Shown: in pieces, positions 9,566-61,255 of the stretch
Numbering within the stretch: the first letter of the stretch is position 1
Layout of the letters: the number at the start of each line of letters is the position of its first letter
Virus record (IMG/VR): IMGVR_UViG_3300021057_000274
Span: 62,001-126,000 of that record
Length of the DNA: 64,000 nt
Strand: one strand, 5' to 3'
Position numbers and translations under genes: made by a program
The notes under the pieces: model-generated
Database searches by the model: none
What the model saw: only the letters and a program-made list of their open reading frames with translations
Told to the model about the DNA's origin: nothing

Positions 9566-9643
9566 AGCGGAGTGGAGCAGCCCGGTAGCTCGTTGGCCTC
9601 ATAAGCCAAAGGTCGTTGGTTCGAATCCAACCTCACGCAACCA
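9566..9643 (+). tRNA. tRNA-Met(CAU), initiator-like 1:72 mismatch
   Basis: Cloverleaf, loop CTCATAA, CCA; bulge in acceptor stem. Confidence 0.8.
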
Positions 9644-9762
9644 GCTCAGCACCTTCCCCGAGGTGCAAAGCTAACTAGCGGTGGATCGCTAGCACAATCT
9701 GAAAAATCAGTCGTTTCTCCACCTAAGCACAAACGACCGTCGGACGCTGTAACCGACATTTT

Positions 9763-9836
9763 GCGGGTGTGGTACAATGGTAGCATGCAACCTTGCCAAG
9801 GTTGAGACGAGGGTTCGATTCCCTTCACCCGCTCCA
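9763..9836 (+). tRNA. tRNA-Gly(GCC)
   Basis: Cloverleaf, loop TTGCCAA, U73, CCA. Confidence 0.95.
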
Positions 9837-9899
9837 GTAGGTAGTTGTAAAAGGTCGACCGCCCACATGGGGCGGCGGATTTGAAGGTACCTACGCAGT

Positions 9900-9970
9900 G
9901 CGGGTGTAGCTCAATGGTAGAGCAACTGCCTTCCAAGCAGAAGACGGGGGTCCGATTCCCCTCACCCGCT
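9900..9970 (+). tRNA. tRNA-Gly(UCC), no genomic CCA
   Basis: Cloverleaf, loop CTTCCAA. Confidence 0.9.
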
Positions 9971-9972
9971 CC

Positions 9973-10046
9973 GAGGTTGTCGTCTAAGTGAAGACGCTGG
10001 GGCCCCAAAATCTCCAGAAACGGTGGTTCAAACCCATCCGACCTCG
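9973..10046 (+). ncRNA. tRNA-like RNA with 11-nt anticodon loop
   Basis: gaggttg/cgacctc acceptor, D and T arms; loop GCCCCAAAATC. Confidence 0.6.
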
Positions 10047-10171
10047 CCGATGCTGGAGTTCAAACGCGAAGCCGGTTTCCGGAGCTAGCTCAACCTGAAC
10101 TCGCAGCAGAAGCATCACAGGGTTGGGGGTTTCGCGGACCTCTGTGTTTCAAGAGCTTTGCTGATGCGTCT

Positions 10172-10247
10172 GGGGAAGTAGCTCAGCTGGGAGAGCGCAA
10201 CGTTCGCAACGTTGAGGTCGAGGGTTCGATCCCCTTCTTCTCCACCA
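10172..10247 (+). tRNA. tRNA-Ala(CGC)
   Basis: Cloverleaf, G3-U70, CCA. Confidence 0.95.
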
Positions 10248-10302
10248 CGTTAGTCCCGTAACTAGTACTCGGGACAGTGATCGGTGAGACTCCGATCAAG
10301 TT

Positions 10303-10378
10303 GGGGCCTTAGCTCAGCTGGGAGAGCGTATGCATGGCATGCATAAGGTCAAGGGTTCGATCCCCTTAGGCTCCACCA
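10303..10378 (+). tRNA. tRNA-Ala(GGC)
   Basis: Cloverleaf, G3-U70, loop ATGGCAT. Confidence 0.95.
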
Positions 10379-10506
10379 ATCGCGCACTGAGCGGAGACGC
10401 TTGGGGCGAAAGAGGGTTCAAAGCTGGTGCTGAGAAGTCGGGGTAAGAGCTAACGCCCAACCCGAGAACCTCAGGATGATGCTCGCTTTGATTGCGTTAG
10501 CACCAA

Positions 10507-10581
10507 GCGGAATTAGTTCAGTGGCTAGAACGAGAGCTTCCCAAGCTCAAGACGCGGGTCCGATTCCCGCATTCCGCTCCA
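10507..10581 (+). tRNA. tRNA-Gly(CCC)
   Basis: Cloverleaf, loop TTCCCAA, CCA. Confidence 0.95.
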
Positions 10582-12757: not shown

Positions 12758-13708
12758 ATGAGCAATTCCTACAACCTTCAATTTCAGAAGGATCGGACCT
12801 TTCTCAAGGCCTACATGTTGGGGAGAGGATACTCCCTCGGGCTCAAGGCTCTCGGCTTCTCAGAGCGACACCACACCGGACTCAGGAAGGACAAGCAGAC
12901 CCCGGAGTTTCATCACCAGGTTCAGATCGCTCTCTCGGTTCTCGATCTCAAGGGGCTCATCAACGAGGAGCTCGCGATCGTCATCGCTCTCCTCCATGAC
13001 GTTCAGGAGGATCACCGCGTTCCGACCGAGGCGATCCGCCGCGAGTTTGGCGACGATGTCGCCTCCGTCAACTGGAAGATGACCAAGAAGTTTGTCGAGA
13101 CCGACGGCACGCTCACGGTCAAGGACAGAGAAGCTTACATCATCGATCTCTCACTTGACGCGACTGGTTCGATCGTCAAGGGGCTTGACCGAGTCAACAA
13201 TCTTCAGACGATGATCGGCGTCTTCACCGTCGAGAAGATGCAGAGCTACGCCGACGAGGCGGAGACGATCTTCCTCCCGATGCTGAAGAAGGCGTCGAAG
13301 CACTTCCCCGAACAACATCACGCGTATCAGGCCGTGCAGCAAACGATGAAGCGCCAGCTCAAGTGGATTCGCGCTTACATCGACTTGCACCAGCGCCTCG
13401 AAGCTCACATCGATCATGTCGAGATGGAGCACGAGGCAACGATCGTAGAGCGAAACGCGGCGCTAAAGACGAACGCTGATTTGCGTCACTTCACAGAAAC
13501 TCTTCAAGAGAAAAATCGAGGACTCGCAGAGATTGCCGCCAAAGGGGTGACGGAAATAAACCGCGCGCTGATTCGTGCCGTTGCTAAAGCGCTTCTCGAG
13601 AACCGCGTGACAGGTGACAAGCATGACAGCGTCTTACAGCGTCTTGCATGGCGTCATGCGCGAGCTGGGCATCTCCGAGCTCGAGATGATCCAATTTCGC
13701 GACGATAA
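12758..13708 (+). CDS. HD-domain (p)ppGpp hydrolase-like (RelA/SpoT HD) protein with coiled-coil tail
   Basis: H.G.RK...P..H, LLHDVQED, K..DRVNN; possible indel near 13645. Confidence 0.8.
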   Translation: MSNSYNLQFQKDRTFLKAYMLGRGYSLGLKALGFSERHHTGLRKDKQTPEFHHQVQIALSVLDLKGLINEELAIVIALLHDVQEDHRVPTEAIRREFGDDVASVNWKMTKKFVETDGTLTVKDREAYIIDLSLDATGSIVKGLDRVNNLQTMIGVFTVEKMQSYADEAETIFLPMLKKASKHFPEQHHAYQAVQQTMKRQLKWIRAYIDLHQRLEAHIDHVEMEHEATIVERNAALKTNADLRHFTETLQEKNRGLAEIAAKGVTEINRALIRAVAKALLENRVTGDKHDSVLQRLAWRHARAGHLRARDDPISRR

Positions 13709-18748: not shown

Positions 18749-18824
18749 GCGCCTGTAGCTCAGTGGAGAGAGTGCCGCGCTACGAACGCGGAGGTCGGGG
18801 GTTCGATCCCCTCCAGGCGTGCCA
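18749..18824 (+). tRNA. tRNA-Arg(ACG)
   Basis: Cloverleaf, CCA. Confidence 0.95.
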
Positions 18825-19028
18825 GAGGTTAAGTCGATGACCTCGATGTAACACCTAGAAGTCGACAACGCCGGTGAATCAGGGCGTGGGGAACCAAGTA
18901 CTGGTTGGATGCTGAAATGAAGCCGCGGTTTTACCCTTAAGCGCGGTGGATGACTGAGAAAGGGCGCTGTAGCCGGTCTAGCATGGGTGTCGAAGTCGAC
19001 TCCCCCTCGATCGGAGCGGTGACAAGAT

Positions 19029-19100
19029 ACGCCCGCCGATGGATTTTCGGCGCCAGGTCTTCTAAACCAGGATAGGAGGGTTCGATTCCTTCCGGGCGTG
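19029..19100 (+). tRNA. tRNA-Arg(UCU), no genomic CCA
   Basis: Loop CTTCTAA; A-A mismatch in anticodon stem. Confidence 0.75.
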
Positions 19101-19103
19101 CCT

Positions 19104-19177
19104 TCCCACATAGCTCAATGGTAGAGCCGCTGGTTGTGAACCAGATTGCCCGGGTCCGATTCCCGGTGTGGGACCCA
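19104..19177 (+). tRNA. tRNA-His(GUG)
   Basis: Loop TTGTGAA, C73, CCA. Confidence 0.9.
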
Positions 19178-19193
19178 GTAGTTGCAGTTCAAT

Positions 19194-19286
19194 TCCTCGG
19201 TACTCTAACGGTAAGAGACCTGGCTGTTAACCAGACGTATCCCGCCACCGAGCGGTATGGAGGTTCGAGTCCTCCCTGAGGAGCCA
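19194..19286 (+). tRNA. tRNA-Asn(GUU) with long variable region
   Basis: Loop CTGTTAA, G73, ~23-nt variable region. Confidence 0.85.
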
Positions 19287-19289
19287 AAT

Positions 19290-19364
19290 GGGTGCGTAGC
19301 TCAGTGGTAGAGCGGGAACCTGTTAAGTTCCGGGTCGAAGGTTTGATTCCTTCCGTGCCCTCCA
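19290..19364 (+). tRNA. tRNA-Asn(GUU)
   Basis: Loop CTGTTAA, CCA. Confidence 0.85.
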
Positions 19365-19375
19365 CAATTCAGTAA

Positions 19376-19441
19376 CCGGGAAGTCCTAGTGACGTATTGC
19401 CGCGGCTGCCATCGTTGGCACGTAGGCTAGGACTTCCCGGT
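19376..19441. repeat. 15-bp perfect inverted repeat hairpin
   Basis: accgggaagtcctag/ctaggacttcccggt. Confidence 0.8.
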
Positions 19442-19455
19442 AGAAGTACAACATT

Positions 19456-19530
19456 GGCTCATTGATGAATGGGTTATCATACTACCCTGTCACGGTAGGT
19501 TAGCGGGTTCGAGTCCCGCATGGGTCGCCA
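19456..19530 (+). tRNA. tRNA-Asp(GUC)
   Basis: Loop CTGTCAC, G73, CCA. Confidence 0.95.
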
Positions 19531-19534
19531 AAAT

Positions 19535-19615
19535 GCGCTTCGGGAGGTTGAATCTCAACAGGTCGGGTCGCTCCCGTCTGTAAAACATGGGTTAAATTCC
19601 TGTGGAAGCGCGCCA
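19535..19615 (+). ncRNA. tRNA-like RNA with non-canonical core
   Basis: gcgcttc/gaagcgc-G-CCA, degenerate T arm, no normal anticodon arm. Confidence 0.55.
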
Positions 19616-19660
19616 AAATTAGAGGCTGACGATTCTGGGCGGCAATCTAGAGTCGGCGGT

Positions 19661-19767
19661 TTGTCGTTGAGGGTGGCTCCTCAGGACCCCGAGTAGGACG
19701 GTGAGATCTTGCCGGATCGAGCCGTTTGAAACGGGTCCTGTCGGTGGTTCGATTCCACCACGACTTC
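19661..19767 (+). ncRNA. tRNA-like RNA with expanded anticodon arm
   Basis: gtcgt/acgac, D-like hairpin, ggaccc/gggtcc enclosing ~45 nt, canonical T arm. Confidence 0.5.
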
Positions 19768-19954
19768 ACTCTAACCCTCTTCATGAAGCTGTGGGTAGAT
19801 CACCCTGCCACAAATCGGGTGATGAGGTCCGATCGCCTTCGTCCGTGGCATGCATGGCGCCAGGGCGATACCCCAGCAGTAACTGCGGCCGTCACCGAAC
19901 TTTATGCGAGAAAGTTCAGCGGTGACGAGGAGGAGGCGAACTGCTCGTTCAGTT

Positions 19955-20029
19955 GTCCCATTCGTCTAGTGGCTAGGACACAACCCTTTCAAGGTTGAGA
20001 ACGGGGATCGAAACCCCGATGGGACACCA
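19955..20029 (+). tRNA. tRNA-Glu(UUC)
   Basis: Loop CTTTCAA, CCA. Confidence 0.95.
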
Positions 20030-20033
20030 CTAT

Positions 20034-20109
20034 CTGGGTGTAGGTCAGCGGCGAGACTGCCTGGTCCGGAGCCAGGAGGCCGTGGGTTCGAGTCCCACCA
20101 CCCAGACCA
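20034..20109 (+). tRNA. tRNA-Pro(CGG), C33
   Basis: C1-G72, A73; loop TCCGGAG. Confidence 0.9.
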
Positions 20110-20149
20110 AAGCGGCCCCCAGCGCCGCTCTAAGCCGAGGCTGGGGCAT

Positions 20150-20225
20150 CGGAGAGTCGCCTAGCGGCTATGGCGCCTGCTTTGGGAGCAGGATACCGTG
20201 GGTTCGAGTCCCACCTTTCCGACCA
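20150..20225 (+). tRNA. tRNA-Pro(UGG)
   Basis: Loop TTTGGGA, CCA. Confidence 0.95.
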
Positions 20226-20235
20226 ACACATCAAT

Positions 20236-20310
20236 CGCTTCTTGGCGGCAAGCTGCCGTGCTCCCACTAGAAGGGAGAGCGAGGAGGTTCACGCCCTCCA
20301 GGAGCGACCA
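20236..20310 (+). tRNA. atypical tRNA, UAG anticodon (Leu-like) without long arm
   Basis: Full cloverleaf plus CCA; loop ACTAGAA; D loop lacks GG; T loop TTCACGC. Confidence 0.55.
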
Positions 20311-20311
20311 C

Positions 20312-20385
20312 GGGTCCGTAGTTCAATGGTAGAATGTTACCTCGACACGGTAGAGACGAAGGTTCGATTCCTTCTGGACCCACCA
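20312..20385 (+). tRNA. tRNA-Val(GAC), C33
   Basis: Loop TCGACAC, CCA. Confidence 0.9.
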
Positions 20386-20391
20386 AAATTT

Positions 20392-20465
20392 GGGCTACAA
20401 GCTTTAAGGTGAAGCATCTGGCTCTTACCCAGAAGAACGGGGATCATTACCCCGGTAGCCCACCA
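20392..20465 (+). tRNA. tRNA-Lys(CUU)
   Basis: Loop CTCTTAC, CCA. Confidence 0.9.
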
Positions 20466-20468
20466 GCA

Positions 20469-20617
20469 TTCGGTAGTGACCTAACGTTCAGGACGAAAGG
20501 AATCGTGCGGTCGCCCTAGTACCAGCTCTGGGTGACTAAACGGAGTCGAGTAGGCCTGCTCGCAAAAGGGATCGGTCAGGGACTGGTACTCCAGAGGTTC
20601 GACTCCTCCTACCGGAC
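20469..20617 (+). ncRNA. 149-nt tRNA-like RNA with expanded D and anticodon arms
   Basis: ttcggtag/ctaccgga, agtaccag/ctggtact, GG-TTCGACT-CC T arm. Confidence 0.55.
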
Positions 20618-20625
20618 TAAACTAG

Positions 20626-20702
20626 GGTTCTTTAGCTCAGATGCGTAGAGCGCCGAGCTTACACCTCGGATGTCGGGGGTTCAAGTCCCTCAGGAACCAC
20701 CA
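20626..20702 (+). tRNA. tRNA-Val(UAC)
   Basis: Loop CTTACAC, CCA. Confidence 0.95.
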
Positions 20703-20704
20703 AT

Positions 20705-20780
20705 GGCGATGTGGTGAACTGGCTATCACGCGGCTCTCATAAGGCTGAGTAGACGGGATCGAAACCCTCCATCGCTACCA
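20705..20780 (+). tRNA. tRNA-Met or Ile2 (CAU)
   Basis: Loop CTCATAA, CCA; identity not resolvable by eye. Confidence 0.9.
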
Positions 20781-20881
20781 TTCTAGGAAGTTGGGACTGC
20801 TCAAGCGGACGGAGTCCGGTAGCCCTCGCGGGGAGACCAATGAGTTGTGGTTCGATTCAACGCCTAGCTTTTATTGCGCTT

Positions 20882-20956
20882 CCCTCATTCGTCTAATGGT
20901 CAGGGCCCGTGCTTGATAGGCGCGTGACGGTGGTTCGATTCCATCATGAGGGACCA
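20882..20956 (+). tRNA. tRNA-Ile(GAU)
   Basis: Loop TTGATAG, CCA. Confidence 0.9.
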
Positions 20957-21046
20957 ACAGCAGCCGAGAAGCAGGCCCGTCGGTCGGTTAGAGAGCCTTC
21001 CGCACGTGCGCTCCGTGAAGCCACGGCAAACGGACTGCTGCATTAT

Positions 21047-21121
21047 CAGGGTGTAGCTCAGTGGGAGAGTGCTACGTCGGGAACGTAGAGGCCGCAGGTT
21101 CAATCCCTGCCACCCTGACCA
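21047..21121 (+). tRNA. tRNA-Pro(GGG), C33
   Basis: C1-G72, A73; loop TCGGGAA. Confidence 0.9.
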
Positions 21122-21224
21122 ATAGCTGGCTTGCAAGTGACGAGAGGTCATCATGCTTCGGAGCGCACGCTGGGGATAAGCTCCCAGCGCAGCGACCTAG
21201 ACGGCAAGCTGGCGGGCCTTATTT

Positions 21225-21295
21225 CAGAGCGTAGCGTAGTGGTAGCGTACCTGGCCTGGAACCAGGAGGTGTTGGTTCGATTCCAGCCGCTCTGA
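21225..21295 (+). tRNA. tRNA-Pro(UGG), C33, no genomic CCA
   Basis: C1-G72, A73; loop CCTGGAA. Confidence 0.85.
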
Positions 21296-21297
21296 CC

Positions 21298-21385
21298 GGG
21301 GGAAGATGTAGGTTCGAATCCTATCCAATGGCCATAAGCCCGTGAGGGTGGCTGGCAGGTAGCTCAACCGGCAGAGCAGCTCCCC
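21298..21385 (+). ncRNA. circularly permuted tRNA-like RNA (T arm before D arm; YrlA-like topology)
   Basis: GTAGG-TTCGAAT-CCTAT precedes TAGCTC-AACCGGCA-GAGC; ends gggga/tcccc pair. Confidence 0.6.
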
Positions 21386-21391
21386 TTTCTG

Positions 21392-21467
21392 GTACATTAG
21401 CTCATGGGGTTAGAGCGCGCGCCCGATAAGCGCGGGGTGGAAGGTTCGAGTCCTTCATGTACCACCA
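21392..21467 (+). tRNA. tRNA-Ile(GAU), C33
   Basis: Loop CCGATAA, CCA. Confidence 0.9.
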
Positions 21468-21600
21468 GACAACACCGTTGCTTCTCACCGAGAGAAGCCA
21501 GCTAGCAAGCGAAGCAGACATTCGTCTAGATCACTGCGACTGGACCCGGAATCCCTCGCGTGGTGGCCGATTGTCGGCTAGGACGGATTCGTTGTCTACT

Positions 21601-21673
21601 GGGGGATGTAGCCGGGGCACAGGAACGCCTTGCAAGCGATCCGCGATGGGTTCAACTCCCATATCCTCCACCA
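21601..21673 (+). tRNA. tRNA-Ala(UGC), atypical D and anticodon stems
   Basis: G3-U70, loop CTTGCAA, CCA. Confidence 0.75.
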
Positions 21674-21774
21674 GATCTTTAGCTCAAACGGGTAAGAGCG
21701 GCGGGACAGATAACCCGCGTCAAGGTGAGCTACGGCGAGCCGAGTGCGGCGACCCCATGCCGTAAGATCTACCA
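21673..21774 (+). ncRNA. tRNA-like RNA with 8-nt anticodon loop and replaced T arm
   Basis: agatctt/aagatct-A-CCA, canonical D arm, gcggg-ACAGATAA-cccgc, tacggc/gccgta arm. Confidence 0.6.
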
Positions 21775-21778
21775 AACT

Positions 21779-21849
21779 GGGCTGTTAGTTTAGCGGGAAA
21801 ACACTGCGCTTGCACCGCGGAATCCGGGGTTCGACTCCCCGACGGTCCA
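21779..21849 (+). tRNA. tRNA-Ala(UGC), no genomic CCA
   Basis: G3-U70, loop CTTGCAC. Confidence 0.9.
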
Positions 21850-21863
21850 CCCACAGATAGGAG

Positions 21864-22052
21864 ATGATCATGTTACCGATCGACGAAGCTGTCAAGCTCA
21901 CCGACATGGATGAGCTGGGTCGTGAGGAGTGGGAGCGTCTCTTCATCTCGACGAACCCGATGTGGAACGTCAGCCCGACCGAGGTCATGAGCGAGGTCAG
22001 AAGGTTGGGTGAACGTCGTAAGGAGCTCCTCAAGGGAGTTCGCTGGTTCTAA
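21864..22052 (+). CDS. small hypothetical protein inside tRNA array
   Basis: AGGAG RBS, 62 aa. Confidence 0.65.
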   Translation: MIMLPIDEAVKLTDMDELGREEWERLFISTNPMWNVSPTEVMSEVRRLGERRKELLKGVRWF

Positions 22053-22057
22053 GCTGT

Positions 22058-22131
22058 TGGGGATTGGTGAAATGGTATCATGTGAGATTCTGACTCTCAA
22101 GTCGTAGGTTCGATTCCTACATCCCCTGCCA
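22058..22131 (+). tRNA. tRNA-Gln(CUG)
   Basis: Loop TTCTGAC, G73, CCA. Confidence 0.95.
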
Positions 22132-22180
22132 CACAACGTCCCTCCACGCCTCTCAACGATGCGCACCCAGGAGGGCCTCT

Positions 22181-22253
22181 GTGCCTCAGACCAATCTGGT
22201 GATGGACCGAGCCTGAAAGCCTCGGAAGCTCGGTTCGATTCCGAGGGGGCACA
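22181..22253 (+). tRNA. tRNA-Phe(GAA), no genomic CCA
   Basis: Loop CTGAAAG; C31-C39 mismatch. Confidence 0.8.
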
Positions 22254-22255
22254 CC

Positions 22256-22348
22256 GGTAGGTGGCGCTGGCGCGCGGCTGGGCCTTATAGACCCGGGAGA
22301 CTGGCCGGACTGGCTGGAACGGCGAGGGTTCGAATCCCCGACCTACCA
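22256..22348 (+). tRNA. tRNA with UAU anticodon (Ile-type) and long variable arm
   Basis: ggtaggt/acctacc-A; loop CTTATAG; ~25-nt variable region. Confidence 0.65.
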
Positions 22349-22453
22349 CCTGTAAGAATCTCCCGAGGTTTGACCCGAGGAGTCGTTAGAGAAGATGATA
22401 TCTCGCTGGCGACGGCCAGAGAACCCCGGGGATGACAGACTCCCGGGACGATT

Positions 22454-22529
22454 GGCCCTTAAGCTAATCAGGTGAAAGCGCCGGTCTGAAAAGCCGGAGA
22501 GTCTGGTTCGATACCAGAAGGGGCCACCA
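22454..22529 (+). tRNA. tRNA-Phe(GAA)
   Basis: Loop CTGAAAA, CCA. Confidence 0.95.
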
Positions 22530-22547
22530 ATACAGGAGGATCGCCAA

Positions 22548-22634
22548 ATGTTCAAAGCTTGGTGGGACAATGGGGCAACGAGAGGCTTTGGGATGCGCTT
22601 ATTCCGGAGCTGGCTTTGTGGTGATTGCTGCTAG
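22548..22634 (+). CDS. 28-aa Trp/Cys-rich peptide
   Basis: AGGAGG RBS; MFKAWWDNGATRGFGMRLFRSWLCGDCC. Confidence 0.45.
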   Translation: MFKAWWDNGATRGFGMRLFRSWLCGDCC

Positions 22635-22653
22635 AGCGATTCCGGACAGACAG

Positions 22654-22731
22654 ATGACATGGAGCTGGTACTTCTTTCTCGGATTTCGCGTACGTGGAAA
22701 GCACTTAATTGATTTTCGCTGGACGAAGTAG
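22654..22731 (+). CDS. 25-aa aromatic-rich peptide
   Basis: MTWSWYFFLGFRVRGKHLIDFRWTK; weak RBS. Confidence 0.35.
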   Translation: MTWSWYFFLGFRVRGKHLIDFRWTK

Positions 22732-22737
22732 ATCTGT

Positions 22738-22810
22738 TGGGGTGAGGATTGGCATCTACGGATGGCTTTGAACCATCTCGGACACGGTTCGATTCCGTGC
22801 GCCCCTGCCA
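22738..22810 (+). tRNA. tRNA-Gln(UUG)
   Basis: Loop CTTTGAA, G73, CCA. Confidence 0.85.
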
Positions 22811-22966
22811 AGGTTGATGGAATGATCATCGACGCCTAGAAGAGCGTGCACGCTTCCTCCAGAGCGGCTAGACGTGAGGAGGATTTTGGATGAAGGGCTA
22901 TCCTCGTTCGATTCGAGGCGTCCTGAACGAAACGGCGCCGAGTCGGTGGAAGCCCGGCGCCTGCAT

Positions 22967-23038
22967 GTCCCGTTGGATTTCCGGGTAGATCGCTGGGACT
23001 TCACCCCAGAGAGACGGGTTCAACTCCCGTACGGGACG
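22967..23038 (+). tRNA. tRNA-Glu(UUC), C33, no genomic CCA
   Basis: Loop ACTTCAC, G73. Confidence 0.85.
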
Positions 23039-23045
23039 CCCCCAC

Positions 23046-23134
23046 GGGGCGCGACGCTGAAGACACCGCCGCGGGCTCAACGCTAGGCCACCGCGGTAAG
23101 ACTTCGGGGCGGACGGTTTCCGCGCGCTCCACCA
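23046..23134 (+). ncRNA. Ala-acceptor tRNA-like RNA resembling a tmRNA TLD with no mRNA domain
   Basis: ggggcgc/gcgctcc with G3-U70, A73, CCA; stemless D region; accgc/gcggt arm. Confidence 0.55.
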
Positions 23135-23151
23135 AATGATACAATAGCTAG

Positions 23152-23907: not shown

Positions 23908-23967
23908 TGGTAAGGACGCTAGCCCCTCAAGCTGGAAACCCGGGTTCGATTCCCGGCTCGGACGCCA
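23893..23967 (+). tRNA. tRNA-Glu(CUC), C33
   Basis: Loop CCCTCAA, CCA; overlaps DUF72 stop. Confidence 0.9.
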
Positions 23968-23968
23968 C

Positions 23969-56928: not shown

Positions 56929-58035
56929 GTGGACCCCAAGATCTATCTGGTAGGCGGCGCTGTACGAGACCACGTGCTGGGAGTTCTCAGCAAGGATCGT
57001 GACTACGTCGTCGTCGGGGCCACTCCCGAGTGGATGATTGAGCGCGGCTTCAAGCGGGTGGGAGCCGACTTCCCGGTTTTCTTGCACCCTGAGACCAGGT
57101 ACGAGTACGCCCTGGCGCGGCAAGAGCGCAAGACCGGCCCAGGCTATCACGGCTTCGACACTCGGTTCGACCCCAGCATCACGCTGGAGGACGATCTGCG
57201 TCGTCGTGACTTGACGATCAACGCGATGGCGATGACCGACGAGGGTGAGATCATCGACCCGTTCGGCGGCTTGACCGACCTGAAAGCTGGCGTGTTGCGT
57301 CACACCAGCGAGGCCTTCGCCGAGGATCCGTTGCGCGTCTTGCGCGTCGCTCGCTTCGCCGCTCGCTATGATTTCACGATCGACCAGACCACCGTCGAGC
57401 TGGCGCGGAAGATCGTCGCTTCAGGCGAGCTGAACTCCCTGCCGCGCGAGCGCTTCTGGACCGAGCTGTGGAAGGGTTTCAACGAGAAGCATCCCTCCAA
57501 GATGATCTCCGCTCTGGAGAACATGAACGCGATTGCGACGGCACCGCTGAACCAGTACTTCGGCAGAAATTTCTCTCTGGACGTCACCGTCGAGAAGATG
57601 AAAGCCGCCGAAAAGAAGTCACTCCCGGCGATCGCCGTTGCAGCTCTGACCCTGGGGCCGATAGACGCCGACAAAGCGAACGAGCTGCGGGTGCCCTCAG
57701 ACGTGTACCGCGTTCATGTCTGGGCCAATAAGCTGGCGATGCTGCACACCCATGACACGGCTGAGAAGATGATCAAGTTCATGGGAAGCATCAAGTATGA
57801 CATCACCAACCCCGACTACTATGCGGCGCTGAGAACTAGCGAGCTGATCGCGTCGCTGATGCTGGACGATCGCAACTTTTCTCGGTGGCACGAGATGAGC
57901 GGCCGAATGGTCATGGTCGACGCCGAGCTGAAGAAGACCAACTTCAAGGAGGTCGCCGAGAACGGGCCGAAGGCGACCATCAGGGAGCGGATTAACGCCG
58001 CTCGCTTAGCCGCGGCCCGGAGAGCTTTCAGCTAA
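56929..58035 (+). CDS. cca: tRNA nucleotidyltransferase (CCA-adding enzyme, class II, no HD domain)
   Basis: [36 protein letters not shown]. Confidence 0.95.
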
Positions 58036-58047: not shown

Positions 58048-58251
58048 ATGGATGAGGAGATGTACAAAGAGGTGAGGCAGATGTTTTGGCTCAAGACCTT
58101 CGACTCGGCGGTGCGCTCGGCGGATTGCGCGAACGCGCCCCACGCGACTGCGAGGCTCGCTGGCGAGATCGCTGATGCCGCGTGCAACGAGCTGGACAAG
58201 CGGATGAAGCCGAAGCCGAAGACCGAGCCGCGCGGCACGAAGGCAACCTGA
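58048..58251 (+). CDS. small hypothetical protein
   Basis: GGAG RBS. Confidence 0.6.
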   Translation: MDEEMYKEVRQMFWLKTFDSAVRSADCANAPHATARLAGEIADAACNELDKRMKPKPKTEPRGTKAT

Positions 58252-58529
58252 TGCGCCGCCTCGAGCGAGTCATTCCGGACGCGCCGCGTCCCTTCCGCAT
58301 CTACAACTCAAAGGCGCGTCGCTTCTTCCGCTGGTACCTCTTCAAGTACAAGGACCGCGCGATGAAGCAAGCCTTCTGGATCGCGCACTGGGTACCTGGC
58401 GTCGCGGTCGAGCTGATCGATATTCGCAACGGCAATTGCCACGGCGTCTACGTCGGGCGACGCGTCGGCGAGAAGATCGTCGTTGAGGCGGTCCGTGAAA
58501 CCATCAAAACGCACAAGGAGTTCAAATGA
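58251..58529 (+). CDS. hypothetical protein
   Basis: TGATG coupling. Confidence 0.65.
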   Translation: MRRLERVIPDAPRPFRIYNSKARRFFRWYLFKYKDRAMKQAFWIAHWVPGVAVELIDIRNGNCHGVYVGRRVGEKIVVEAVRETIKTHKEFK

Positions 58530-58909
58530 AAGGTGACCGCAAGCGGCTAGCCGCTCTCAAGAAGGCCCAGCAAGCCGCACAAACTCCCTCCGCTCAGGCC
58601 AAGCGCACTGCCGGCATCCGCGCCTACCACGCTCGGCGCCGAGCTCAGCAAGCTGCCCAGCAACAGCAGGGCGAGCGCCTCGGTAGGGCGCAAGACAAGC
58701 GCCTCGCCGCGGCGCAAGCCGAGCAAGTTCGCTACCCCGTCGCCGAGTTCATTCCCGGCGGCAGGCAGCCCAACCTCGAGCTCGAGGGCGACCGTCCGCG
58801 TCCGGCGACCTCGTCCAAGCTGATCCAGAGCGCCGAGCAGCGCTTGGACCTGGCGAGGGCCCTAGTCGCGACGGTGCACGAGCTCATCAACCCCAAGAAG
58901 CGATCATGA
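58526..58909 (+). CDS. basic hypothetical protein
   Basis: GGAG RBS; Ala/Gln/Arg-rich. Confidence 0.7.
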   Translation: MKGDRKRLAALKKAQQAAQTPSAQAKRTAGIRAYHARRRAQQAAQQQQGERLGRAQDKRLAAAQAEQVRYPVAEFIPGGRQPNLELEGDRPRPATSSKLIQSAEQRLDLARALVATVHELINPKKRS

Positions 58910-59199
58910 AGTCGAAGAAGTCATCCCTCTCGCGAGCGAAGCAGCTCGCGCTAGCCCGCAAGAGCGCCGCGAAGAAGAGCTCTCGCTCTCGTAAAGCTAC
59001 GAGAGCTCTTCGAGGCAAGCCTGCGGCGTCCGTCAGGACGGTGAAGATGACGGACGTCTTCAAGGACCTTCGTCCGAAGATCAACGACCTCCCGGAGACC
59101 GTGCCGGTGCGCATCAACCCGGACGAGATTTACACCGGCTTCTGGCAGACCAACCTCATCCGGCTGACCCGGATGGAGGGAGGAGGCAACCTACCGTGA
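58906..59199 (+). CDS. basic hypothetical protein
   Basis: Lys/Arg/Ser-rich N-terminus. Confidence 0.65.
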   Translation: MKSKKSSLSRAKQLALARKSAAKKSSRSRKATRALRGKPAASVRTVKMTDVFKDLRPKINDLPETVPVRINPDEIYTGFWQTNLIRLTRMEGGGNLP

Positions 59200-59459
59200 G
59201 GATGCGCTGGGCGGTTCCTGTTAGACACGAGTACAACCACCCCCGCAAGCACGAAGAGCTTCTGTGCTACTGGGTACGGTACCCAGATCACAAGAAGCTC
59301 GAGGTGACGAGCGGGAAGTCGCCCTCAAGGTGGACCGAGGTGCCGCTCGTCAACGTCTTTGAGCCCTTGACTCAAGCCTGCGGCTGCTGCCTCCTGAAGA
59401 AGGGTGAAGTGCCAGCAGATCTCCCCGAGAACAAAATCTTAACTCGGACCAAGTTTTAG
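59196..59459 (+). CDS. hypothetical protein
   Basis: GTGA coupling, GGAGG RBS. Confidence 0.65.
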   Translation: MRMRWAVPVRHEYNHPRKHEELLCYWVRYPDHKKLEVTSGKSPSRWTEVPLVNVFEPLTQACGCCLLKKGEVPADLPENKILTRTKF

Positions 59460-59509
59460 TTGCTCAAGCTAGCAACTGTAAATAGAGGAACCACTTACCG
59501 AGGTTCCCT

Positions 59510-60289
59510 ATGAAGGCTTTTGAGATCGGACTTACCGAAGAGCGCCAGAGCGGGCACAGCTTCGTCTACACCTTCATCTCTCCGATGGGATTCTGCATCG
59601 ACGAGGGCATCGCGGAGCAAATCCTCGGAAATCTCGACTCCGACACGATCACTGACTCCGAGTGGAAGAAGGCTCGCGACGCGATCTGTGACTGGAACAC
59701 CTTCTTCTCCTTCGACGCGCACGAGGTCCGCGGCATCATCGAGGAAGCGCTCTCAAACAGCAAGCATCAAATGAATGACAAGGATGAGGACGATCCCGAG
59801 ACCGAGGTCGAGGAGAATCGTCCCAGCCGACATGATCGCTTCAAGCAAGATCCGGTCGAGGACGCGATCGCTGACGCGGAGGCTTTCGAGAAGGACATCA
59901 ATGATGCGGTCGAGGACGCGATCGTCGAGCTAGCCAAGGACGGCAACGAGGCTGAGCTTCATCAGTACGTCCACCATGAGACCCTCAAGGAAGCTGTCAA
60001 GCTCATCCGCTTCCGCGTCCGCAAGAACGCGACGATGGGCTCTCACTACGCGCTCTTCTCTGACGTAGTTTGCTCACGACGCCTCGAGAAGGAGGAGGTC
60101 AAGGAGCTGAAGGAGGAGCTCTCGGGCCAGTTCTCCGACGGCTGGGGTGAGGGAGTCGAGCAACGCTCCTTCGGCGATCGTCACGGCACCGGGCGCGGCG
60201 GACCAGGACTCTTCTACATCAAGCTCTGGTGGTCTAGCCACGGCGAGCACGAGAGAAACTTGCCGAAGTGGAGCATCCAAGAGATCTAA
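59510..60289 (+). CDS. acidic hypothetical late protein
   Basis: TAAATA 59479. Confidence 0.75.
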   Translation: MKAFEIGLTEERQSGHSFVYTFISPMGFCIDEGIAEQILGNLDSDTITDSEWKKARDAICDWNTFFSFDAHEVRGIIEEALSNSKHQMNDKDEDDPETEVEENRPSRHDRFKQDPVEDAIADAEAFEKDINDAVEDAIVELAKDGNEAELHQYVHHETLKEAVKLIRFRVRKNATMGSHYALFSDVVCSRRLEKEEVKELKEELSGQFSDGWGEGVEQRSFGDRHGTGRGGPGLFYIKLWWSSHGEHERNLPKWSIQEI

Positions 60290-60344
60290 TTTTCCATCTC
60301 TTGATTCGGTGATAAAATTGACTCTCTCATCACACGGAGAGTCG

Positions 60345-60995
60345 ATGACGAAGCCACTCAGGGTTGTGAACTTTTTTGCAGGGCCTGGCACCGGAAAGAG
60401 CACCACCGCGACCGCGCTCTTCGCTGAGCTCAAGTACCAGGGCTACAACACCGAATACGTCTCAGAGTACGCGAAGGACGCGACCTGGGAGCGCCGCGGC
60501 GAGAAGGTCTTCAAGTCTCAAGAGTACATCTTCGGCAAGCAACACTTTCGCCTCTCGCGCGTCGCGGAGGAGGTCGACTTCGTCATCACCGACAGCCCGG
60601 TCCTCCTCGCGATCGCGTACACTCCCTCAGACTACTACATGCCCTCTCTCATCAAGACGATCAAGGAGGCGCACGACAACTACGAGAGCATCAACATCCT
60701 GCTCGAGCGCTCAGATCAAAAGGCCTACAATCCTGCCGGTCGCAACCAGACCGAGGCCGAGGCCAGGGAGAAGGACGTCGTGATGAGGGGTGTCGTCGAG
60801 AAGAACTGTCCCTTCTACTACACGATGCCGTTCGGGCGCGTCAACCCGTGGCAAGTGATCGACCTGATGTTCGATCACGGTTGGATCGAGGACGTCAGCA
60901 AGGCGCTCCAAGCTACACAGAGCGCGATCTCAGCCGCGCAAGAAGCCGCCAAATTTTACGAGAGAAGACTCGCCAGGCTCGCCGAGTGCTCCTGA
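60345..60995 (+). CDS. NadR-type (AAA_28) P-loop kinase/ATPase
   Basis: AGPGTGKST, EYVSEYAK, ITDSP. Confidence 0.8.
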   Translation: MTKPLRVVNFFAGPGTGKSTTATALFAELKYQGYNTEYVSEYAKDATWERRGEKVFKSQEYIFGKQHFRLSRVAEEVDFVITDSPVLLAIAYTPSDYYMPSLIKTIKEAHDNYESINILLERSDQKAYNPAGRNQTEAEAREKDVVMRGVVEKNCPFYYTMPFGRVNPWQVIDLMFDHGWIEDVSKALQATQSAISAAQEAAKFYERRLARLAECS

Positions 60996-61180
60996 GGCTA
61001 CGTTGGAATTGTGTCACTTCGTTTTTCAGTGCTTTCAAGACATCGATGTAGAGGCGATCCTTTACTTAGTGTTAGCTGGGATATTTGGAAGCGTGCTTAC
61101 TATGACTTTAAACCGAGAGAAAAGATGAGAATTGAGTAGAAAAGCGGCGAGATCTGTGATATAATCTCTCTACTTTAACT

Positions 61181-61255
61181 GCTCCCTTAGCTCAGCGGCA
61201 GAGTACGGGACTCTAAATCCTAGGGTCGTGGGTTCGAATCCCACAGGGAGCACCA
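61181..61255 (+). tRNA. amber-suppressor tRNA (anticodon CUA)
   Basis: Cloverleaf, loop CTCTAAA, A73, CCA; own TGATATAAT promoter. Confidence 0.88.

What the first reader, a model, noticed from the sequence alone, without database searches (positions are those of the whole stretch)
9566..61255. Self-contained tRNA maturation and translation-rescue toolkit
Seen: ~45 tRNAs, RNase P RNA, CCA enzyme, Pth2-like hydrolase, IF-3, suppressor tRNA and HD/metallo/2H phosphoesterases. Seven canonical tRNAs end in CC-N rather than CCA. Inference: the phage can rebuild a tRNA pool after host tRNA destruction.
Basis: partly seen in the sequence, partly recalled or inferred. Interest (0 to 1): 0.6.

Follow-up and report, generated by a model that had tools for sequence, protein, structure and literature searches.

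The report
Jumbo phage with its own RNase P
A 396-kb soil phage carries about 45 tRNA genes plus its own stripped-down RNase P ribozyme, a CCA-adding enzyme, IF-3 and an orphan antitoxin RNA. The gene set is a known type for giant phages, but a phage-borne RNase P RNA appears not to have been described.

Summary
The window lies in a soil jumbo myovirus of about 395.7 kb. Its nearest isolate is Ralstonia phage RsoM2USA (DNA polymerase 44% identical).

- 41 tRNA genes by strict detection, 45 by relaxed detection
- an amber-suppressor tRNA
- a class II CCA-adding enzyme
- IF-3
- an HD (Rel/SpoT-hydrolase-like) protein and a metallophosphoesterase
- a 265-nt RNase P RNA at 34406-34670 with its own promoter

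Not in the window: Pth2 (it sits at genome 380 kb) and any 2H enzyme (only Acb1, at 280 kb). CC-N ends number six, and only 2-3 belong to good tRNAs.

The ribozyme looks functional. Its E-value is 1e-21. Across it and three relatives (233-282 nt), 20 pairs in P4/P5/P15/P16 are 100% paired, eight with compensatory changes. P10-P14 of the S-domain are almost gone. No RnpA gene is present.

At least 19 other viral contigs, including two complete 369- and 385-kb phages, hold RNase P RNA inside tRNA arrays. I found no paper reporting this.

An orphan abiF antitoxin RNA sits inside the array.

The kit is not self-contained: it has no synthetases, no RnpA and no good tRNA-Ser.

The parts
9567..10581 (+). 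tRNA cluster I: Met(CAU), Gly(GCC), Gly(UCC), Ala(CGC), Ala(GGC), Gly(CCC), plus a weak tRNA-like unit at 9973-10048 that directly abuts Gly(UCC).
   Evidence: ARAGORN and Rfam. The relaxed ARAGORN run and the 3' ends are.
12758..13708 (+). 316-aa protein with an HD_4 (Rel/SpoT-type hydrolase) domain at residues 31-174. It is a candidate small alarmone hydrolase.
   Evidence: Pfam PF13328, E = 3.7e-10. Weak PDB sequence hits to Rel/SpoT hydrolase domains, Mesh1 and small alarmone hydrolases.
18749..25598 (+). tRNA cluster II: 33 tRNA genes by strict detection, 37 by relaxed detection. Small unknown ORFs and a DUF72 gene are interspersed.
22140..22176 (+). abiF RNA motif, the antitoxin RNA of the AbiF type III toxin-antitoxin and abortive-infection system. 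It lies in the 49-nt spacer between tRNA-Gln(CUG) and a tRNA-like unit.
   Evidence: RF03085, 48 bits against a gathering score of 37, with a perfect loop and a compensated stem. It is the only copy in the genome, and the genome has no Abi_2 gene.
23152..23907 (+). DUF72 (YecE-like) protein encoded inside the tRNA array. Its function is unknown.
   Evidence: Pfam PF01904, E = 2.5e-51. The literature search gave no function.
27294..28025 (+). Calcineurin-like metallophosphoesterase, ending 9 nt before tRNA-Val(CAC).
   Evidence: Pfam PF00149, E = 1.5e-10. No PDB sequence relative was found.
28035..28108 (+). tRNA-Val(CAC).
34370..34398 (+). Sigma-70-type promoter (TATACA, 17 nt, TG-extended TACAAT) ending 8 nt before the 5' end of the RNase P RNA.
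   Evidence: 1 site found against 0.1 expected in shuffles.
34406..34670 (+). RNase P RNA of bacterial type A with an intact catalytic domain. P4 with its bulged U, CR-I, CR-V, J5/15 and the GGU of L15 are present. In the specificity domain, the model's 105-nt P10-P14 stretch is replaced by 25 nt.
   Evidence: cmscan alignment. Covariation across four phage copies. A syntenic orthologue lies in L271. The stretch is contiguous with 0 differences in the contigs of two runs.
37023..37526 (+). Translation initiation factor IF-3. The probable start is an AUA codon at 37023 with a GAGG Shine-Dalgarno at 37011-37014. The ATG at 37098 would cut off part of the N-domain.
   Evidence: Pfam IF3_N and IF3_C. 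The nearest bacterial IF-3 proteins are only 49-56% identical.
56929..58035 (+). Class II tRNA nucleotidyltransferase (CCA-adding or A-adding enzyme), 368 aa, without an HD domain.
   Evidence: Pfam PolyA_pol head plus RNA-binding domain. The GGAVRD, RRD and EDPLRVLR motifs align to T. maritima 3h37. It is 58-59% identical to the enzymes of phages RsoM2USA and phiN3.
61181..61255 (+). Amber-suppressor tRNA (anticodon CUA) of unknown amino-acid identity, with an encoded CCA.
   Evidence: ARAGORN and Rfam, 65.4 bits. It is at most 71% identical to any other phage tRNA. The genome shows no sign of TAG recoding.

Best explanation
This is the translation-support and counter-defence region of a complete jumbo myovirus of about 395.7 kb from soil. 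Its host is probably a proteobacterium.

WHAT THE PHAGE DOES (proposed)
- It transcribes two dense arrays of tRNA genes whose anticodons match its own G/C-ending codon preference.
- It matures these tRNAs partly with its own parts.
- A separately promoted 265-nt RNase P RNA cuts the 5' leaders. This RNA keeps the whole catalytic domain and the L15 GGU that binds 3'-CCA, but has lost most of the T-loop-reading specificity domain. It presumably works with the host's RnpA protein.
- The cuts also separate abutting units.
- A class II nucleotidyltransferase then adds the missing A (or CCA) to the few tRNAs that end in CC, and repairs damaged 3' ends.

OTHER PARTS
- IF-3 and the suppressor tRNA act on initiation and termination.
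- A 37-nt orphan abiF antitoxin RNA lies directly in front of a tRNA-like unit, so the same processing would release it. It would neutralise a host AbiF HEPN RNase.
- The HD_4 protein may hydrolyse alarmones or pyrophosphorylated tRNA ends.
- Pth2, Rnl2-type RNA ligases, a P-loop kinase and Acb1, elsewhere in the genome, belong to the same strategy.

SHOWN: the genes and RNAs, their conservation and covariation, and their arrangement.

INFERRED: activity of the ribozyme, use of host RnpA, the decoy role of abiF RNA, and the claim that the purpose is to keep translation running when host tRNAs are depleted or cut.
For: PHAGE IDENTITY AND COMPLETENESS
- Baseplate, virion and T4-like polymerase PHROGs.
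- The nearest isolates are RsoM2USA and XacN1.
- Two independent assemblies of 395,730 and 395,674 bp have different start points.

tRNAs
-.
- The anticodon set matches preferred codons, for example AAG 54.5 against AAA 4.3 per 1000 codons with only tRNA-Lys(CUU) present.

RNase P RNA
- Full-length match at E = 1.7e-21 with CR-I and CR-V intact.
- Own promoter.
- A syntenic orthologue lies in a relative whose neighbouring protein is only 48% identical.
- Further reduced copies of 233-286 nt sit in or beside tRNA arrays.
- 20 pairs in P4/P5/P15/P16 are 100% paired. Eight have changes on both sides. 0 of 500 shuffles reach this, and slid controls give 34-49%.
- The GGGU of L15 is invariant.
- 37 of the 47 + strand tRNA calls encode CCA, which fits a CCA-reading type A enzyme.

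Wider pattern
- 19 of 42 IMG/VR contigs that carry the RNase P core pattern have 5-33 tRNAs beside it.
- Two of them are complete phage genomes with direct terminal repeats and a terminase.

CC-G ends
- These occur where a tRNA abuts the next unit's 5' G, at 9972/9973 and 22255/22256.

abiF RNA
-.
- The same spacing to a downstream tRNA (33-38 nt) recurs in about 20 other phage tRNA operons.
- 0 of 40 abiF-bearing viral records encode Abi_2.
- The antitoxin role of this RNA is published (10.1101/2025.04.15.648962; PMC12737573).

Counter-defence context
- Rnl2-family ligases, a kinase, Pth2 and Acb1.
Against: - There are no expression data: only two DNA runs hold the phage.
- The RNase P RNA scores below Rfam's gathering threshold (71.7 against 100 bits).
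- It lacks the S-domain elements that bacterial enzymes use to read the T-loop, so activity and specificity are unproven.
- No phage RnpA exists, so function depends on an unknown host protein accepting this RNA.
- The covariation test rests on only four sequences.
- The nearest isolates, RsoM2USA and XacN1, have no RNase P RNA, so it is not essential to this type of phage.
- The tRNA set equally fits a plain codon-supply role.
- The HD_4 and metallophosphoesterase assignments are at domain level only.
- The suppressor tRNA has no identified target: there is no excess of in-frame TAG.
Confidence: 0.6

Rival explanations
1. Plain translation-capacity model. The tRNAs, RNase P RNA, CCA enzyme and IF-3 only raise the supply of adaptors for a very large phage proteome whose codon usage differs from the host's. 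Host defence plays no part.
For: - The anticodon set follows the phage's most used codons.
- Nearly all tRNAs carry CCA and look like ordinary substrates.
- The RNase P RNA has its own constitutive-type promoter.
Against: - The same genome carries dedicated anti-defence parts: orphan abiF RNA, Acb1, RNA ligases and an alarmone-hydrolase-like HD protein.
- Published experiments show that phage tRNAs rescue infection from tRNA nucleases (PMC11464382, PMC11555353).
- The two models are not exclusive.
Confidence: 0.3
2. Altered-specificity ribozyme. The S-domain was lost so that the phage RNase P cuts substrates that the host enzyme handles poorly. Candidates are abutting or degenerate tRNA-like units, the abiF-tRNA junction, and possibly phage or host mRNAs. 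On this view it does not simply add capacity.
For: - The S-domain reduction is conserved in four phage copies while the C-domain covaries.
- The array holds several weak tRNA-like units and directly abutting units.
- The abiF RNA sits 4 nt before a tRNA-like 5' end.
- Other huge phages keep full-size RNase P RNAs, so reduction is a lineage-specific trait.
Against: - No biochemical data exist.
- Reduction could be simple genome streamlining, as in the archaeal T-type RNAs, which still process ordinary tRNAs (PMC7191817).
Confidence: 0.2
3. The RNase P RNA is a decaying passenger captured from a host and has no function.
For: - Its score is below the Rfam threshold and it has large deletions.
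- It is absent from the nearest isolates.
Against: - The helices are 100% paired, with eight compensatory pairs across divergent copies.
- The catalytic motifs and the L15 GGU are invariant.
- It has a promoter at the right distance.
- Its position is syntenic in a relative whose flanking protein is 48% identical.
Confidence: 0.05
4. The record is not a phage but a provirus remnant, plasmid or cellular fragment, so these are ordinary cellular genes.
For: IMG/VR labels the record 'provirus'.
Against: - It has phage structural and replication genes.
- Most ORFs have no family.
- It has no aminoacyl-tRNA synthetases and no RnpA.
- The assemblies of about 395.7 kb are circularly permuted.
- Jumbo-phage relatives exist.
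Confidence: 0.02

Closest known systems
Translation and RNA-repair gene sets of jumbo and huge phages (Iyer et al. 2021, PMC7824862 section 3.4.9; Al-Shayeb et al. 2020, PMC7162821)
   Same: - Large tRNA complements sit alongside a CCA-adding enzyme, Pth2, IF-3, Rnl-type RNA ligases, kinases and phosphoesterases.
- These sets are interpreted as a counter to host RNases and as redirection of translation.
   Different: - Neither paper mentions RNase P: 0 occurrences in each.
- This phage adds its own RNase P RNA and an orphan abiF RNA.
- It has no aminoacyl-tRNA synthetase of the three families searched.
Phage tRNAs as counter-defence against tRNA nucleases: anticodon-loop variants (PMC10264068), PARIS (PMC11464382), retron/PtuAB (PMC11555353), and Cas12a3 cutting tRNA 3' tails (PMC12851939)
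   Same: Phage-encoded tRNAs replace host tRNAs that defence systems cut. A CCA-adding enzyme would logically repair trimmed tails.
   Different: - Those cases concern one or a few tRNAs with tested nucleases.
- Here the set is near-complete, the host and its defences are unknown, and nothing has been tested.
Bacterial type A RNase P RNA (Rfam RF00010; E. coli M1 RNA)
   Same: - P1-P5, P7-P9, P15/P16 and P18, and the P4 pseudoknot with its bulged U.
- The CR-I sequence GAGGAAAGUC and the CR-V sequence ACAGAAUCCCGCUUAC.
- The J5/15 CAA and the L15 GGU that pairs with 3'-CCA.
   Different: - It is 265 nt against the 367-position model.
- The P10-P14 stretch of 105 model positions is replaced by 25 nt, and by less in the relatives.
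- P3 is short and P17 is not conserved.
- It scores below the gathering threshold.
- It is encoded by a virus, without an RnpA partner.
Archaeal type T minimal RNase P RNA (Thermoproteaceae; described in PMC7191817, citing Lai et al. 2010)
   Same: Nearly all of the specificity domain is missing while the catalytic domain is kept. The T-type RNA is reported to remain active.
   Different: - The phage RNAs have a bacterial type A catalytic domain and still keep P7-P9 and a CR-III-like stretch.
- The reduction is an independent event in a bacterial-type scaffold.
- PMC7191817 states that the T-type occurs only in archaea.
Theta (HDV-like) ribozymes next to phage tRNAs (PMC10879173)
   Same: Phage-encoded catalytic RNAs placed in tRNA gene clusters and proposed to mature phage tRNAs, including suppressor tRNAs.
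   Different: - Theta ribozymes are small self-cleaving RNAs that act in cis on 3' trailers, found in gut phages with TAG recoding.
- Here the RNA is a trans-acting RNase P for 5' ends, in a soil phage with no sign of recoding.
AbiF/AbiFr type III toxin-antitoxin system (10.1101/2025.04.15.648962; PMC12737573), and phage antitoxin mimics such as pseudo-ToxI of phage phiTE (my own recollection of Blower et al. 2012; not checked here)
   Same: The 37-nt RNA matches the abiF antitoxin motif, which binds and neutralises the AbiF HEPN RNase. A phage copy without the toxin would work like pseudo-ToxI.
   Different: - There is no toxin gene here, nor in 40 of 40 other abiF-bearing viral records.
- The copy is single, not tandem.
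- It is embedded in a tRNA operon directly upstream of a tRNA.
- The cyanophage S-CREM1 paper noted phage abiF sRNAs but proposed no function (PMC9964418).

Membership tests
Bacterial RNase P RNA, class A (RF00010) | Score at or above Rfam's gathering threshold (100 bits). | tested here: not met
   The window copy scores 71.7 bits at E = 1.7e-21, with the full model span 1-367. The relatives score 75.8-84.5 bits, and L274 scores 139.8.
Bacterial RNase P RNA, class A (RF00010) | Catalytic core: the P4 pseudoknot with a bulged U, formed by CR-I and CR-V. | tested here: met
   GAGGAAAGUC and ACAGAAUCCCGCUUAC align to the model. All 7 P4 pairs are paired in 4 of 4 copies, with one G-C to C-G double change.
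Bacterial RNase P RNA, class A (RF00010) | L15 GGU motif that pairs with the tRNA 3'-CCA, flanked by P15 and P16. | tested here: met
   GGGU is invariant in 4 of 4 copies. P15 (3 pairs) and P16 (6 pairs) are 100% paired, with 6 compensatory pairs between them.
Bacterial RNase P RNA, class A (RF00010) | Complete specificity domain (P10-P14 with CR-II). | tested here: not met
   A 105-position stretch of the model is replaced by 25 nt in the window copy. In L271 and L278 even less remains.
Bacterial RNase P RNA, class A (RF00010) | Partner protein RnpA and pre-tRNA cleavage activity. | not testable with these tools
   The genome has no PF00825 hit, so a host protein would be needed. Activity requires a biochemical assay.
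Class II CCA-adding enzyme | Pol-beta head domain with the GGxVRD, DxD and RRD motifs, the EDxxR nucleotide-selection motif, and a neck/RNA-binding domain. | tested here: met
   PF01743 at 4.6e-20 and PF12627 at 6.9e-06. [15 protein letters not shown] and EDPLRVLR are seen in the alignment to 3h37.
Class II CCA-adding enzyme | Adds the full CCA, as opposed to A only, CC only or poly(A). | tested here: inconclusive
   The best solved relatives include both CCA-adding and A-adding enzymes at equal E-values of 3e-24 to 4e-24. Sequence alone does not decide.
Translation initiation factor IF-3 | IF3_N and IF3_C domains. | tested here: met
   PF05198 at 3.1e-19 and PF00707 at 2.2e-32. The full N-domain is recovered if the start is AUA at 37023.
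Peptidyl-tRNA hydrolase Pth2 | A PTH2 domain encoded in the window. | tested here: not met
   The only PF01981 hit is at genome 380455-380901 (76.9-79.4 bits), outside the window.
2H phosphoesterase (LigT-like) | A 2H domain encoded in the window. | tested here: not met
   PF13563 gives only 15.4 bits, at genome 280412. That protein is Acb1 (PF23474, 89.6 bits), an anti-CBASS enzyme.
abiF RNA (RF03085), antitoxin of AbiF | Hairpin with the conserved loop, scoring above the gathering threshold. | tested here: met
   48 bits against 37. The loop GCCUCUCAACGAUGC is identical to the consensus and the stem change is compensated.
abiF RNA (RF03085), antitoxin of AbiF | Encoded next to an abiF (Abi_2) toxin gene. 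| tested here: not met
   The genome has no PF07751 hit, and neither do 40 other abiF-bearing viral records. It is therefore an orphan antitoxin-like RNA, not a toxin-antitoxin locus.
T4-type tRNA repair (polynucleotide kinase/phosphatase plus RNA ligase) | An RNA ligase and a 5'-kinase/3'-phosphatase in the genome. | tested here: inconclusive
   Two PF09414 RNA-ligase-family proteins (97 and 39 bits) and an AAA_33 kinase (56.6 bits) are present, all outside the window and dispersed. No phosphatase partner was identified and there is no RtcB.
Small alarmone hydrolase (Rel/SpoT HD hydrolase) | HD_4 domain related to (p)ppGpp hydrolases. | tested here: met
   PF13328 at 3.7e-10. PDB hits to Rel/SpoT hydrolase domains, Mesh1 and SAH at 1.8e-07 to 5e-04. 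The substrate was not tested.
Stop-codon-recoded phage (TAG read as sense) | In-frame TAG in genes and depletion of TAG as a stop codon. | tested here: not met
   TAG ends 24 of 156 long ORFs. Junctions that would be bridged by TAG read-through are not in excess: 38 for TAG against 62 for TGA and 30 for TAA.

The most novel reading that the evidence does not exclude
Huge phages with tRNA arrays commonly carry their own RNase P ribozyme, and one soil lineage that includes this phage has evolved the smallest bacterial-type RNase P RNAs seen so far. These RNAs are 233-286 nt. They have a complete catalytic domain and CCA-binding loop but almost no specificity domain, which parallels the archaeal T-type. 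Together with host RnpA, this enzyme matures the phage's tandem and abutting pre-tRNAs. It also releases an orphan abiF antitoxin RNA that disarms host AbiF HEPN RNases. On this reading, tRNA operons double as delivery vehicles for RNA anti-defence decoys.
Probability: 0.4. Interest if true: 0.85.

Novelty: new variant of a known kind. Interest (0 to 1): 0.68.

Why it matters
RNase P is regarded as a cellular housekeeping ribozyme. A virus-encoded copy under structural selection would extend the list of translation-system parts that viruses own to include a catalytic RNA.

The reduced copies are natural experiments on how little of the specificity domain a bacterial-type RNase P needs. A 233-265-nt RNA can be tested directly in vitro and by complementation.

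The recurring placement of an orphan abiF antitoxin RNA in front of phage tRNAs suggests a general way for phages to express RNA decoys against a toxin family that is ancestral to Cas13.

For the tRNA counter-defence field, this phage shows which steps a phage takes over (supply, 5' cutting, 3' CCA) and which it leaves to the host (charging, RnpA, tRNA-Ser).

Tried and rejected
- **Near-identical DNA in GenBank phages.** None was found for an 8-kb stretch or for the RNase P RNA.
- **A full-size phage RNase P RNA against GenBank phages.** It hit only records that look bacterial. 'Microcystis phage MaAM05' carries fabI, engB and mtgA beside the match. The Acinetobacter 'phage' contigs carry coaD and a LysR regulator. 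I therefore claim no cultured phage with RNase P RNA.
- **Relatives through the neighbouring gene.** The IMG/VR search with the neighbouring saccharopine-dehydrogenase-like protein found nothing. The protein database and contig look-up found the syntenic relative instead.
- **A second IMG/VR pattern scan** for the reduced lineage gave 0 hits.
- **Nearest relatives.** RsoM2USA, XacN1 and three related IMG/VR records have no RNase P RNA.
- **TAG recoding.** Rejected.
- **Whole-molecule folding.** The minimum-free-energy fold is uninformative for this RNA, with a z-score of -1.0.
- **The five-sequence MAFFT alignment** misaligned P1-P3, so those helices were left out of the formal count.
- **Window ORFs without a family.** PHROGs and Pfam gave nothing for about 40 of them, including all small ORFs inside the array.
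- **Solved structures.** No relative was found for the metallophosphoesterase or the 224-aa RNA ligase.
- **DUF72.** The literature gives no function.
- **Expression.** It could not be tested. Only two DNA runs of soil metagenomes hold the phage, and they may be its source.

Full report
**What the sequence is**

The window is bases 62001-126000 of a 389,331-bp virus record that IMG/VR labels 'provirus'. Several results show it is a phage.
- Large genes elsewhere in the record match PHROGs for baseplate hub, baseplate wedge, virion structural proteins, an SbcC-like nuclease, endolysin and a T4-like DNA polymerase.
- By polymerase, the closest isolate is Ralstonia jumbo phage RsoM2USA at 43.7% identity. 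Xanthomonas phage XacN1 follows at 33%.
- The same sequence was assembled twice, as JGI Ga0196981_1000006 (395,730 bp) and as an ENA contig (395,674 bp). The two have different start points.
- That pattern fits a complete, circularly permuted genome of about 395.7 kb rather than an integrated prophage.
- The DNA comes from soil metagenomes, and only DNA runs hold it.
- The stretch 32500-37600 lies in one piece, with no differences, in the contigs of both runs.

The best named homologues of two window proteins are proteobacterial. The saccharopine-dehydrogenase-like protein is 37-40% identical to Achromobacter, Bordetella and Cupriavidus proteins. IF-3 is 49-56% identical mainly to proteins of Proteobacteria such as Steroidobacteraceae, Azospirillaceae and Burkholderiales. 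The host is therefore probably a proteobacterium, but this is inference.

**Checking the observation**
- **tRNAs.** ARAGORN finds 41 tRNA genes in the window and 48 in the genome. The other seven (four Leu, Tyr, two Trp) cluster at genome 372.7-374.8 kb.
- Rfam passes 36 window tRNAs at its gathering score.
- **Confirmed proteins and tRNA:**
  - CCA enzyme at 56929-58035
  - IF-3 at 37098-37526
  - suppressor tRNA(CUA) at 61181-61255
  - an HD_4 protein at 12758-13708
  - a metallophosphoesterase at 27294-28025
- **Pth2 is not in the window.** The genome's single PTH2 gene is at 380455-380901.
- **No 2H enzyme is in the window.** The only 2H-type protein is Acb1, the anti-CBASS phosphodiesterase, at genome 280178-280717.
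- **CC-N ends.** 37 of the 47 + strand calls in the window end in CCA. Six calls within the finding's range end CC-N, and only three of those pass Rfam as tRNAs.
- Two of the CC-G ends arise because the tRNA directly abuts the 5' G of the next unit, at 9972/9973 and 22255/22256.

**The RNase P RNA**

The intergenic gap between a NUDIX gene and a saccharopine-dehydrogenase-like gene holds a full-span match to bacterial class A RNase P RNA at 34406-34670. It is 265 nt and scores 71.7 bits at E = 1.7e-21, below Rfam's gathering score of 100.

The alignment shows these features:
- P1, P2, a short P3, P5, P7-P9, P15/P16 and P18
- the CR-I sequence GAGGAAAGUC and the CR-V sequence ACAGAAUCCCGCUUAC
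- a 105-position stretch of the model (P10-P14) replaced by 25 nt

A sigma-70-type promoter (TATACA, 17 nt, TG-extended TACAAT) ends 8 nt before the RNA's first base. The genome has no RnpA gene.

**Is it functional or a relic?**

A relative answers this. A 51.5-kb contig of an NCBI metagenome-assembled genome (L271) has the same gene order: UvrD helicase, NUDIX, a gap, the saccharopine-dehydrogenase-like gene, and an NT5C nucleotidase. It also carries 13 tRNAs, and its flanking protein is only 48% identical. Its gap holds a 237-nt RNase P RNA.

A pattern scan of metagenome contigs found further reduced copies:
- L275, 282 nt, inside a 30-tRNA array on a 112-kb contig
- L278, 233 nt
- L274, 286 nt

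I marked P4, P5, P15 and P16 by hand on an alignment of four copies. All 80 cells form standard pairs, and eight of the 20 pairs change on both sides. No shuffle of 500 reaches these values, and sliding the partner strand drops pairing to 34-49%. One of the double changes is in the catalytic P4 helix (G-C to C-G).

The GGGU of loop L15, which in type A enzymes pairs with the tRNA 3'-CCA, is invariant. The CAA of J5/15 is also invariant. This fits tRNAs of which about four in five encode CCA.

I conclude that the RNA is maintained by selection for the RNase P fold. Four sequences is a small sample, and I could not align P1-P3 reliably with MAFFT, so those helices are not in the count.

**How unusual is a phage RNase P RNA?**
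- The nearest isolates, RsoM2USA and XacN1, and three related IMG/VR records have none.
- A scan of IMG/VR for the CR-I/P5 core pattern hit 42 contigs.
- In 19 of them, 5-33 tRNA genes lie in the same fetched stretch.
- In all 14 large contigs examined (80-385 kb), Rfam finds an RNase P RNA in or beside a tRNA array. Most are full size (209-277 bits) and some are divergent (73-86 bits). Several also have a tmRNA.
- Two of these records are complete genomes with direct terminal repeats and a terminase, of 369,475 and 385,394 bp.
- Phage-borne RNase P RNA is therefore recurrent in huge phages with tRNA arrays. The lineage of this window is a reduced form of it.

I found no report of it. 'RNase P' does not occur in the two main surveys of huge and jumbo phage gene content. 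Four full-text searches gave nothing relevant. The theta-ribozyme paper on phage tRNA maturation mentions RNase P only as a cellular enzyme. GenBank 'phage' records that match a full-size copy look like bacterial DNA. Absence from a searchable library is not proof of novelty.

The closest structural parallel is the archaeal T-type RNA. It lacks most of the S-domain, stays active, and is said to occur only in Thermoproteaceae (PMC7191817).

**The orphan abiF RNA**

Rfam also reports an abiF RNA at 22140-22176, at 48 bits against a gathering score of 37. Its loop is identical to the consensus and its stem change is compensated. It sits in the 49-nt spacer between tRNA-Gln(CUG) and a tRNA-like unit. 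It is the only copy in the genome, and there is no Abi_2 gene.

The abiF RNA is the antitoxin of the AbiF HEPN RNase, a type III toxin-antitoxin and abortive-infection system related to the ancestor of Cas13 (10.1101/2025.04.15.648962; PMC12737573).

The exact loop core occurs in more than 117 IMG/VR contigs.
- In 30 of them a tRNA lies within 300 nt.
- In about 20 a tRNA, usually Arg(UCU), starts 33-38 nt after the core. The spacing in this window is the same, at 34 nt.
- In those contigs the motif often sits at the head of a tRNA operon, behind a consensus promoter.
- None of the 40 such viral records I tested encodes Abi_2, and 13 of them are at least 90% complete.

The best reading is a toxin-less antitoxin decoy released by tRNA processing. 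This is inference. An earlier paper noted abiF sRNAs in four phages without proposing a function (PMC9964418).

**The other parts**
- **CCA enzyme.** It is a class II nucleotidyltransferase with the GGAVRD, RRD and EDPLRVLR motifs. It is 58-59% identical over the head domain to the enzymes of RsoM2USA and Sinorhizobium phage phiN3. Whether it adds CCA or only A cannot be told from sequence.
- **IF-3.** It probably starts at an AUA codon at 37023, behind a GAGG Shine-Dalgarno, because the conserved N-terminal sequence continues upstream of the annotated ATG. Bacterial infC genes also use a non-canonical start for autoregulation (established knowledge; not tested here).
- **HD_4 protein.** It resembles Rel/SpoT hydrolase domains, Mesh1 and small alarmone hydrolases. 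A role in removing alarmones or tRNA 3'-pyrophosphates is possible but untested.
- **Suppressor tRNA.** It resembles no other phage tRNA, and the genome shows no TAG recoding. Its target is unknown.
- **Outside the window.** The genome has two Rnl2-family RNA ligases, an ATP-dependent DNA ligase, a P-loop kinase, Pth2 and Acb1. It has no RtcB.
- **Synthetases.** There is none of the families PF00587, PF00133 or PF00152.

**Interpretation**

The anticodon set follows the phage's own strongly G/C-ending codon usage. Examples are Lys-CUU only, with AAG at 54.5 against AAA at 4.3 per 1000 codons, and Leu-GAG for CUC at 42.5. The set lacks a credible tRNA-Ser. This looks like replacement of the bulk tRNA supply rather than a top-up of rare codons.

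The phage can supply and partly mature its own tRNA pool, and it can repair or protect that pool. It still depends on the host for charging, for RnpA, for 3' trimming and for some isoacceptors.

The idea itself is established for jumbo phages (PMC7824862) and for single phage tRNAs (PMC10264068, PMC11464382, PMC11555353). The new elements are the phage-borne, S-domain-reduced RNase P RNA and the abiF RNA embedded in the tRNA array.

**Verdict**
- The kind of system is known.
- The ribozyme component is a new variant that is worth testing at the bench.

Noticed in passing
IMG/VR loci L154-L270 (for example L255:1603, L161:42, L241, L267): The abiF RNA loop core occurs in more than 117 viral contigs. 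About 20 share one layout: a consensus promoter, a small hairpin, the abiF hairpin, about 8 nt, then tRNA-Arg(UCU) followed by more tRNAs. None of the 40 records tested has an Abi_2 toxin gene.
   Followed up: partly
L140:5070-5488 (-), IMG/VR contig of 385,394 bp: A GOLLD RNA (212 bits) lies among tRNA genes, about 2 kb from a divergent RNase P RNA (L140:2784-3119, 86 bits). The record is a complete huge phage with direct terminal repeats.
   Followed up: no
window 34685-35773, 40362-40748, 36234-36887, 55385-56374: Metabolic and membrane genes are scattered through the region: a saccharopine-dehydrogenase-like enzyme, an AdoMet decarboxylase, a Bax1-I/YccA-type membrane protein and an NAD kinase. 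The first two may form a polyamine pathway.
   Followed up: no
window 35758-36168 and 26239-26637: An HNH endonuclease gene sits one gene downstream of the RNase P RNA. A DUF559/MTES_1575 endonuclease-like gene lies between tRNA cluster II and tRNA-Val. Both are possible homing endonucleases, like the one reported to amplify tRNA and anti-defence loci in T-even phages (PMC13096335).
   Followed up: no
window 23152-23907: A well-conserved DUF72 (YecE-like) gene (E = 2.5e-51) sits between tRNA-Glu(UUC) and tRNA-Glu(CUC) in the array. The literature search gave no function.
   Followed up: partly
window 37011-37100: IF-3 appears to start at AUA (37023), behind a GAGG Shine-Dalgarno, and not at the ATG at 37098. 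This imitates the non-canonical start of bacterial infC.
   Followed up: partly
genome 280178-280717 (outside the window; L017:6679-7218): Acb1, the anti-CBASS cyclic-oligonucleotide phosphodiesterase (PF23474, 89.6 bits), is the genome's only 2H-type protein.
   Followed up: no
window 48001-52000: GC content drops to 0.47-0.50 against about 0.57-0.60 elsewhere. The dip spans minus-strand genes that include a 744-aa ORF, and a Gp80 fibre-protein gene lies about 3 kb further on at 54892-55302. It may be a recently exchanged host-recognition module.
   Followed up: no
whole record: The IMG/VR label 'provirus' is probably wrong. Two assemblies of 395,730 and 395,674 bp carry the same genes at different offsets, as expected for a circularly permuted free phage genome.
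   Followed up: partly
GenBank MW495066.1 112823-117917 (L359): The record named Microcystis phage MaAM05 holds an RNase P RNA-like stretch next to fabI, engB and mtgA. This part of the record looks bacterial.
   Followed up: no
window 19194-19286: One of the two tRNA-Asn(GUU) genes is 93 nt long, so it carries an insertion. A weak Y-RNA-like (YrlA) match overlaps its 3' part (22 bits, E = 0.41), which is probably chance.
   Followed up: no
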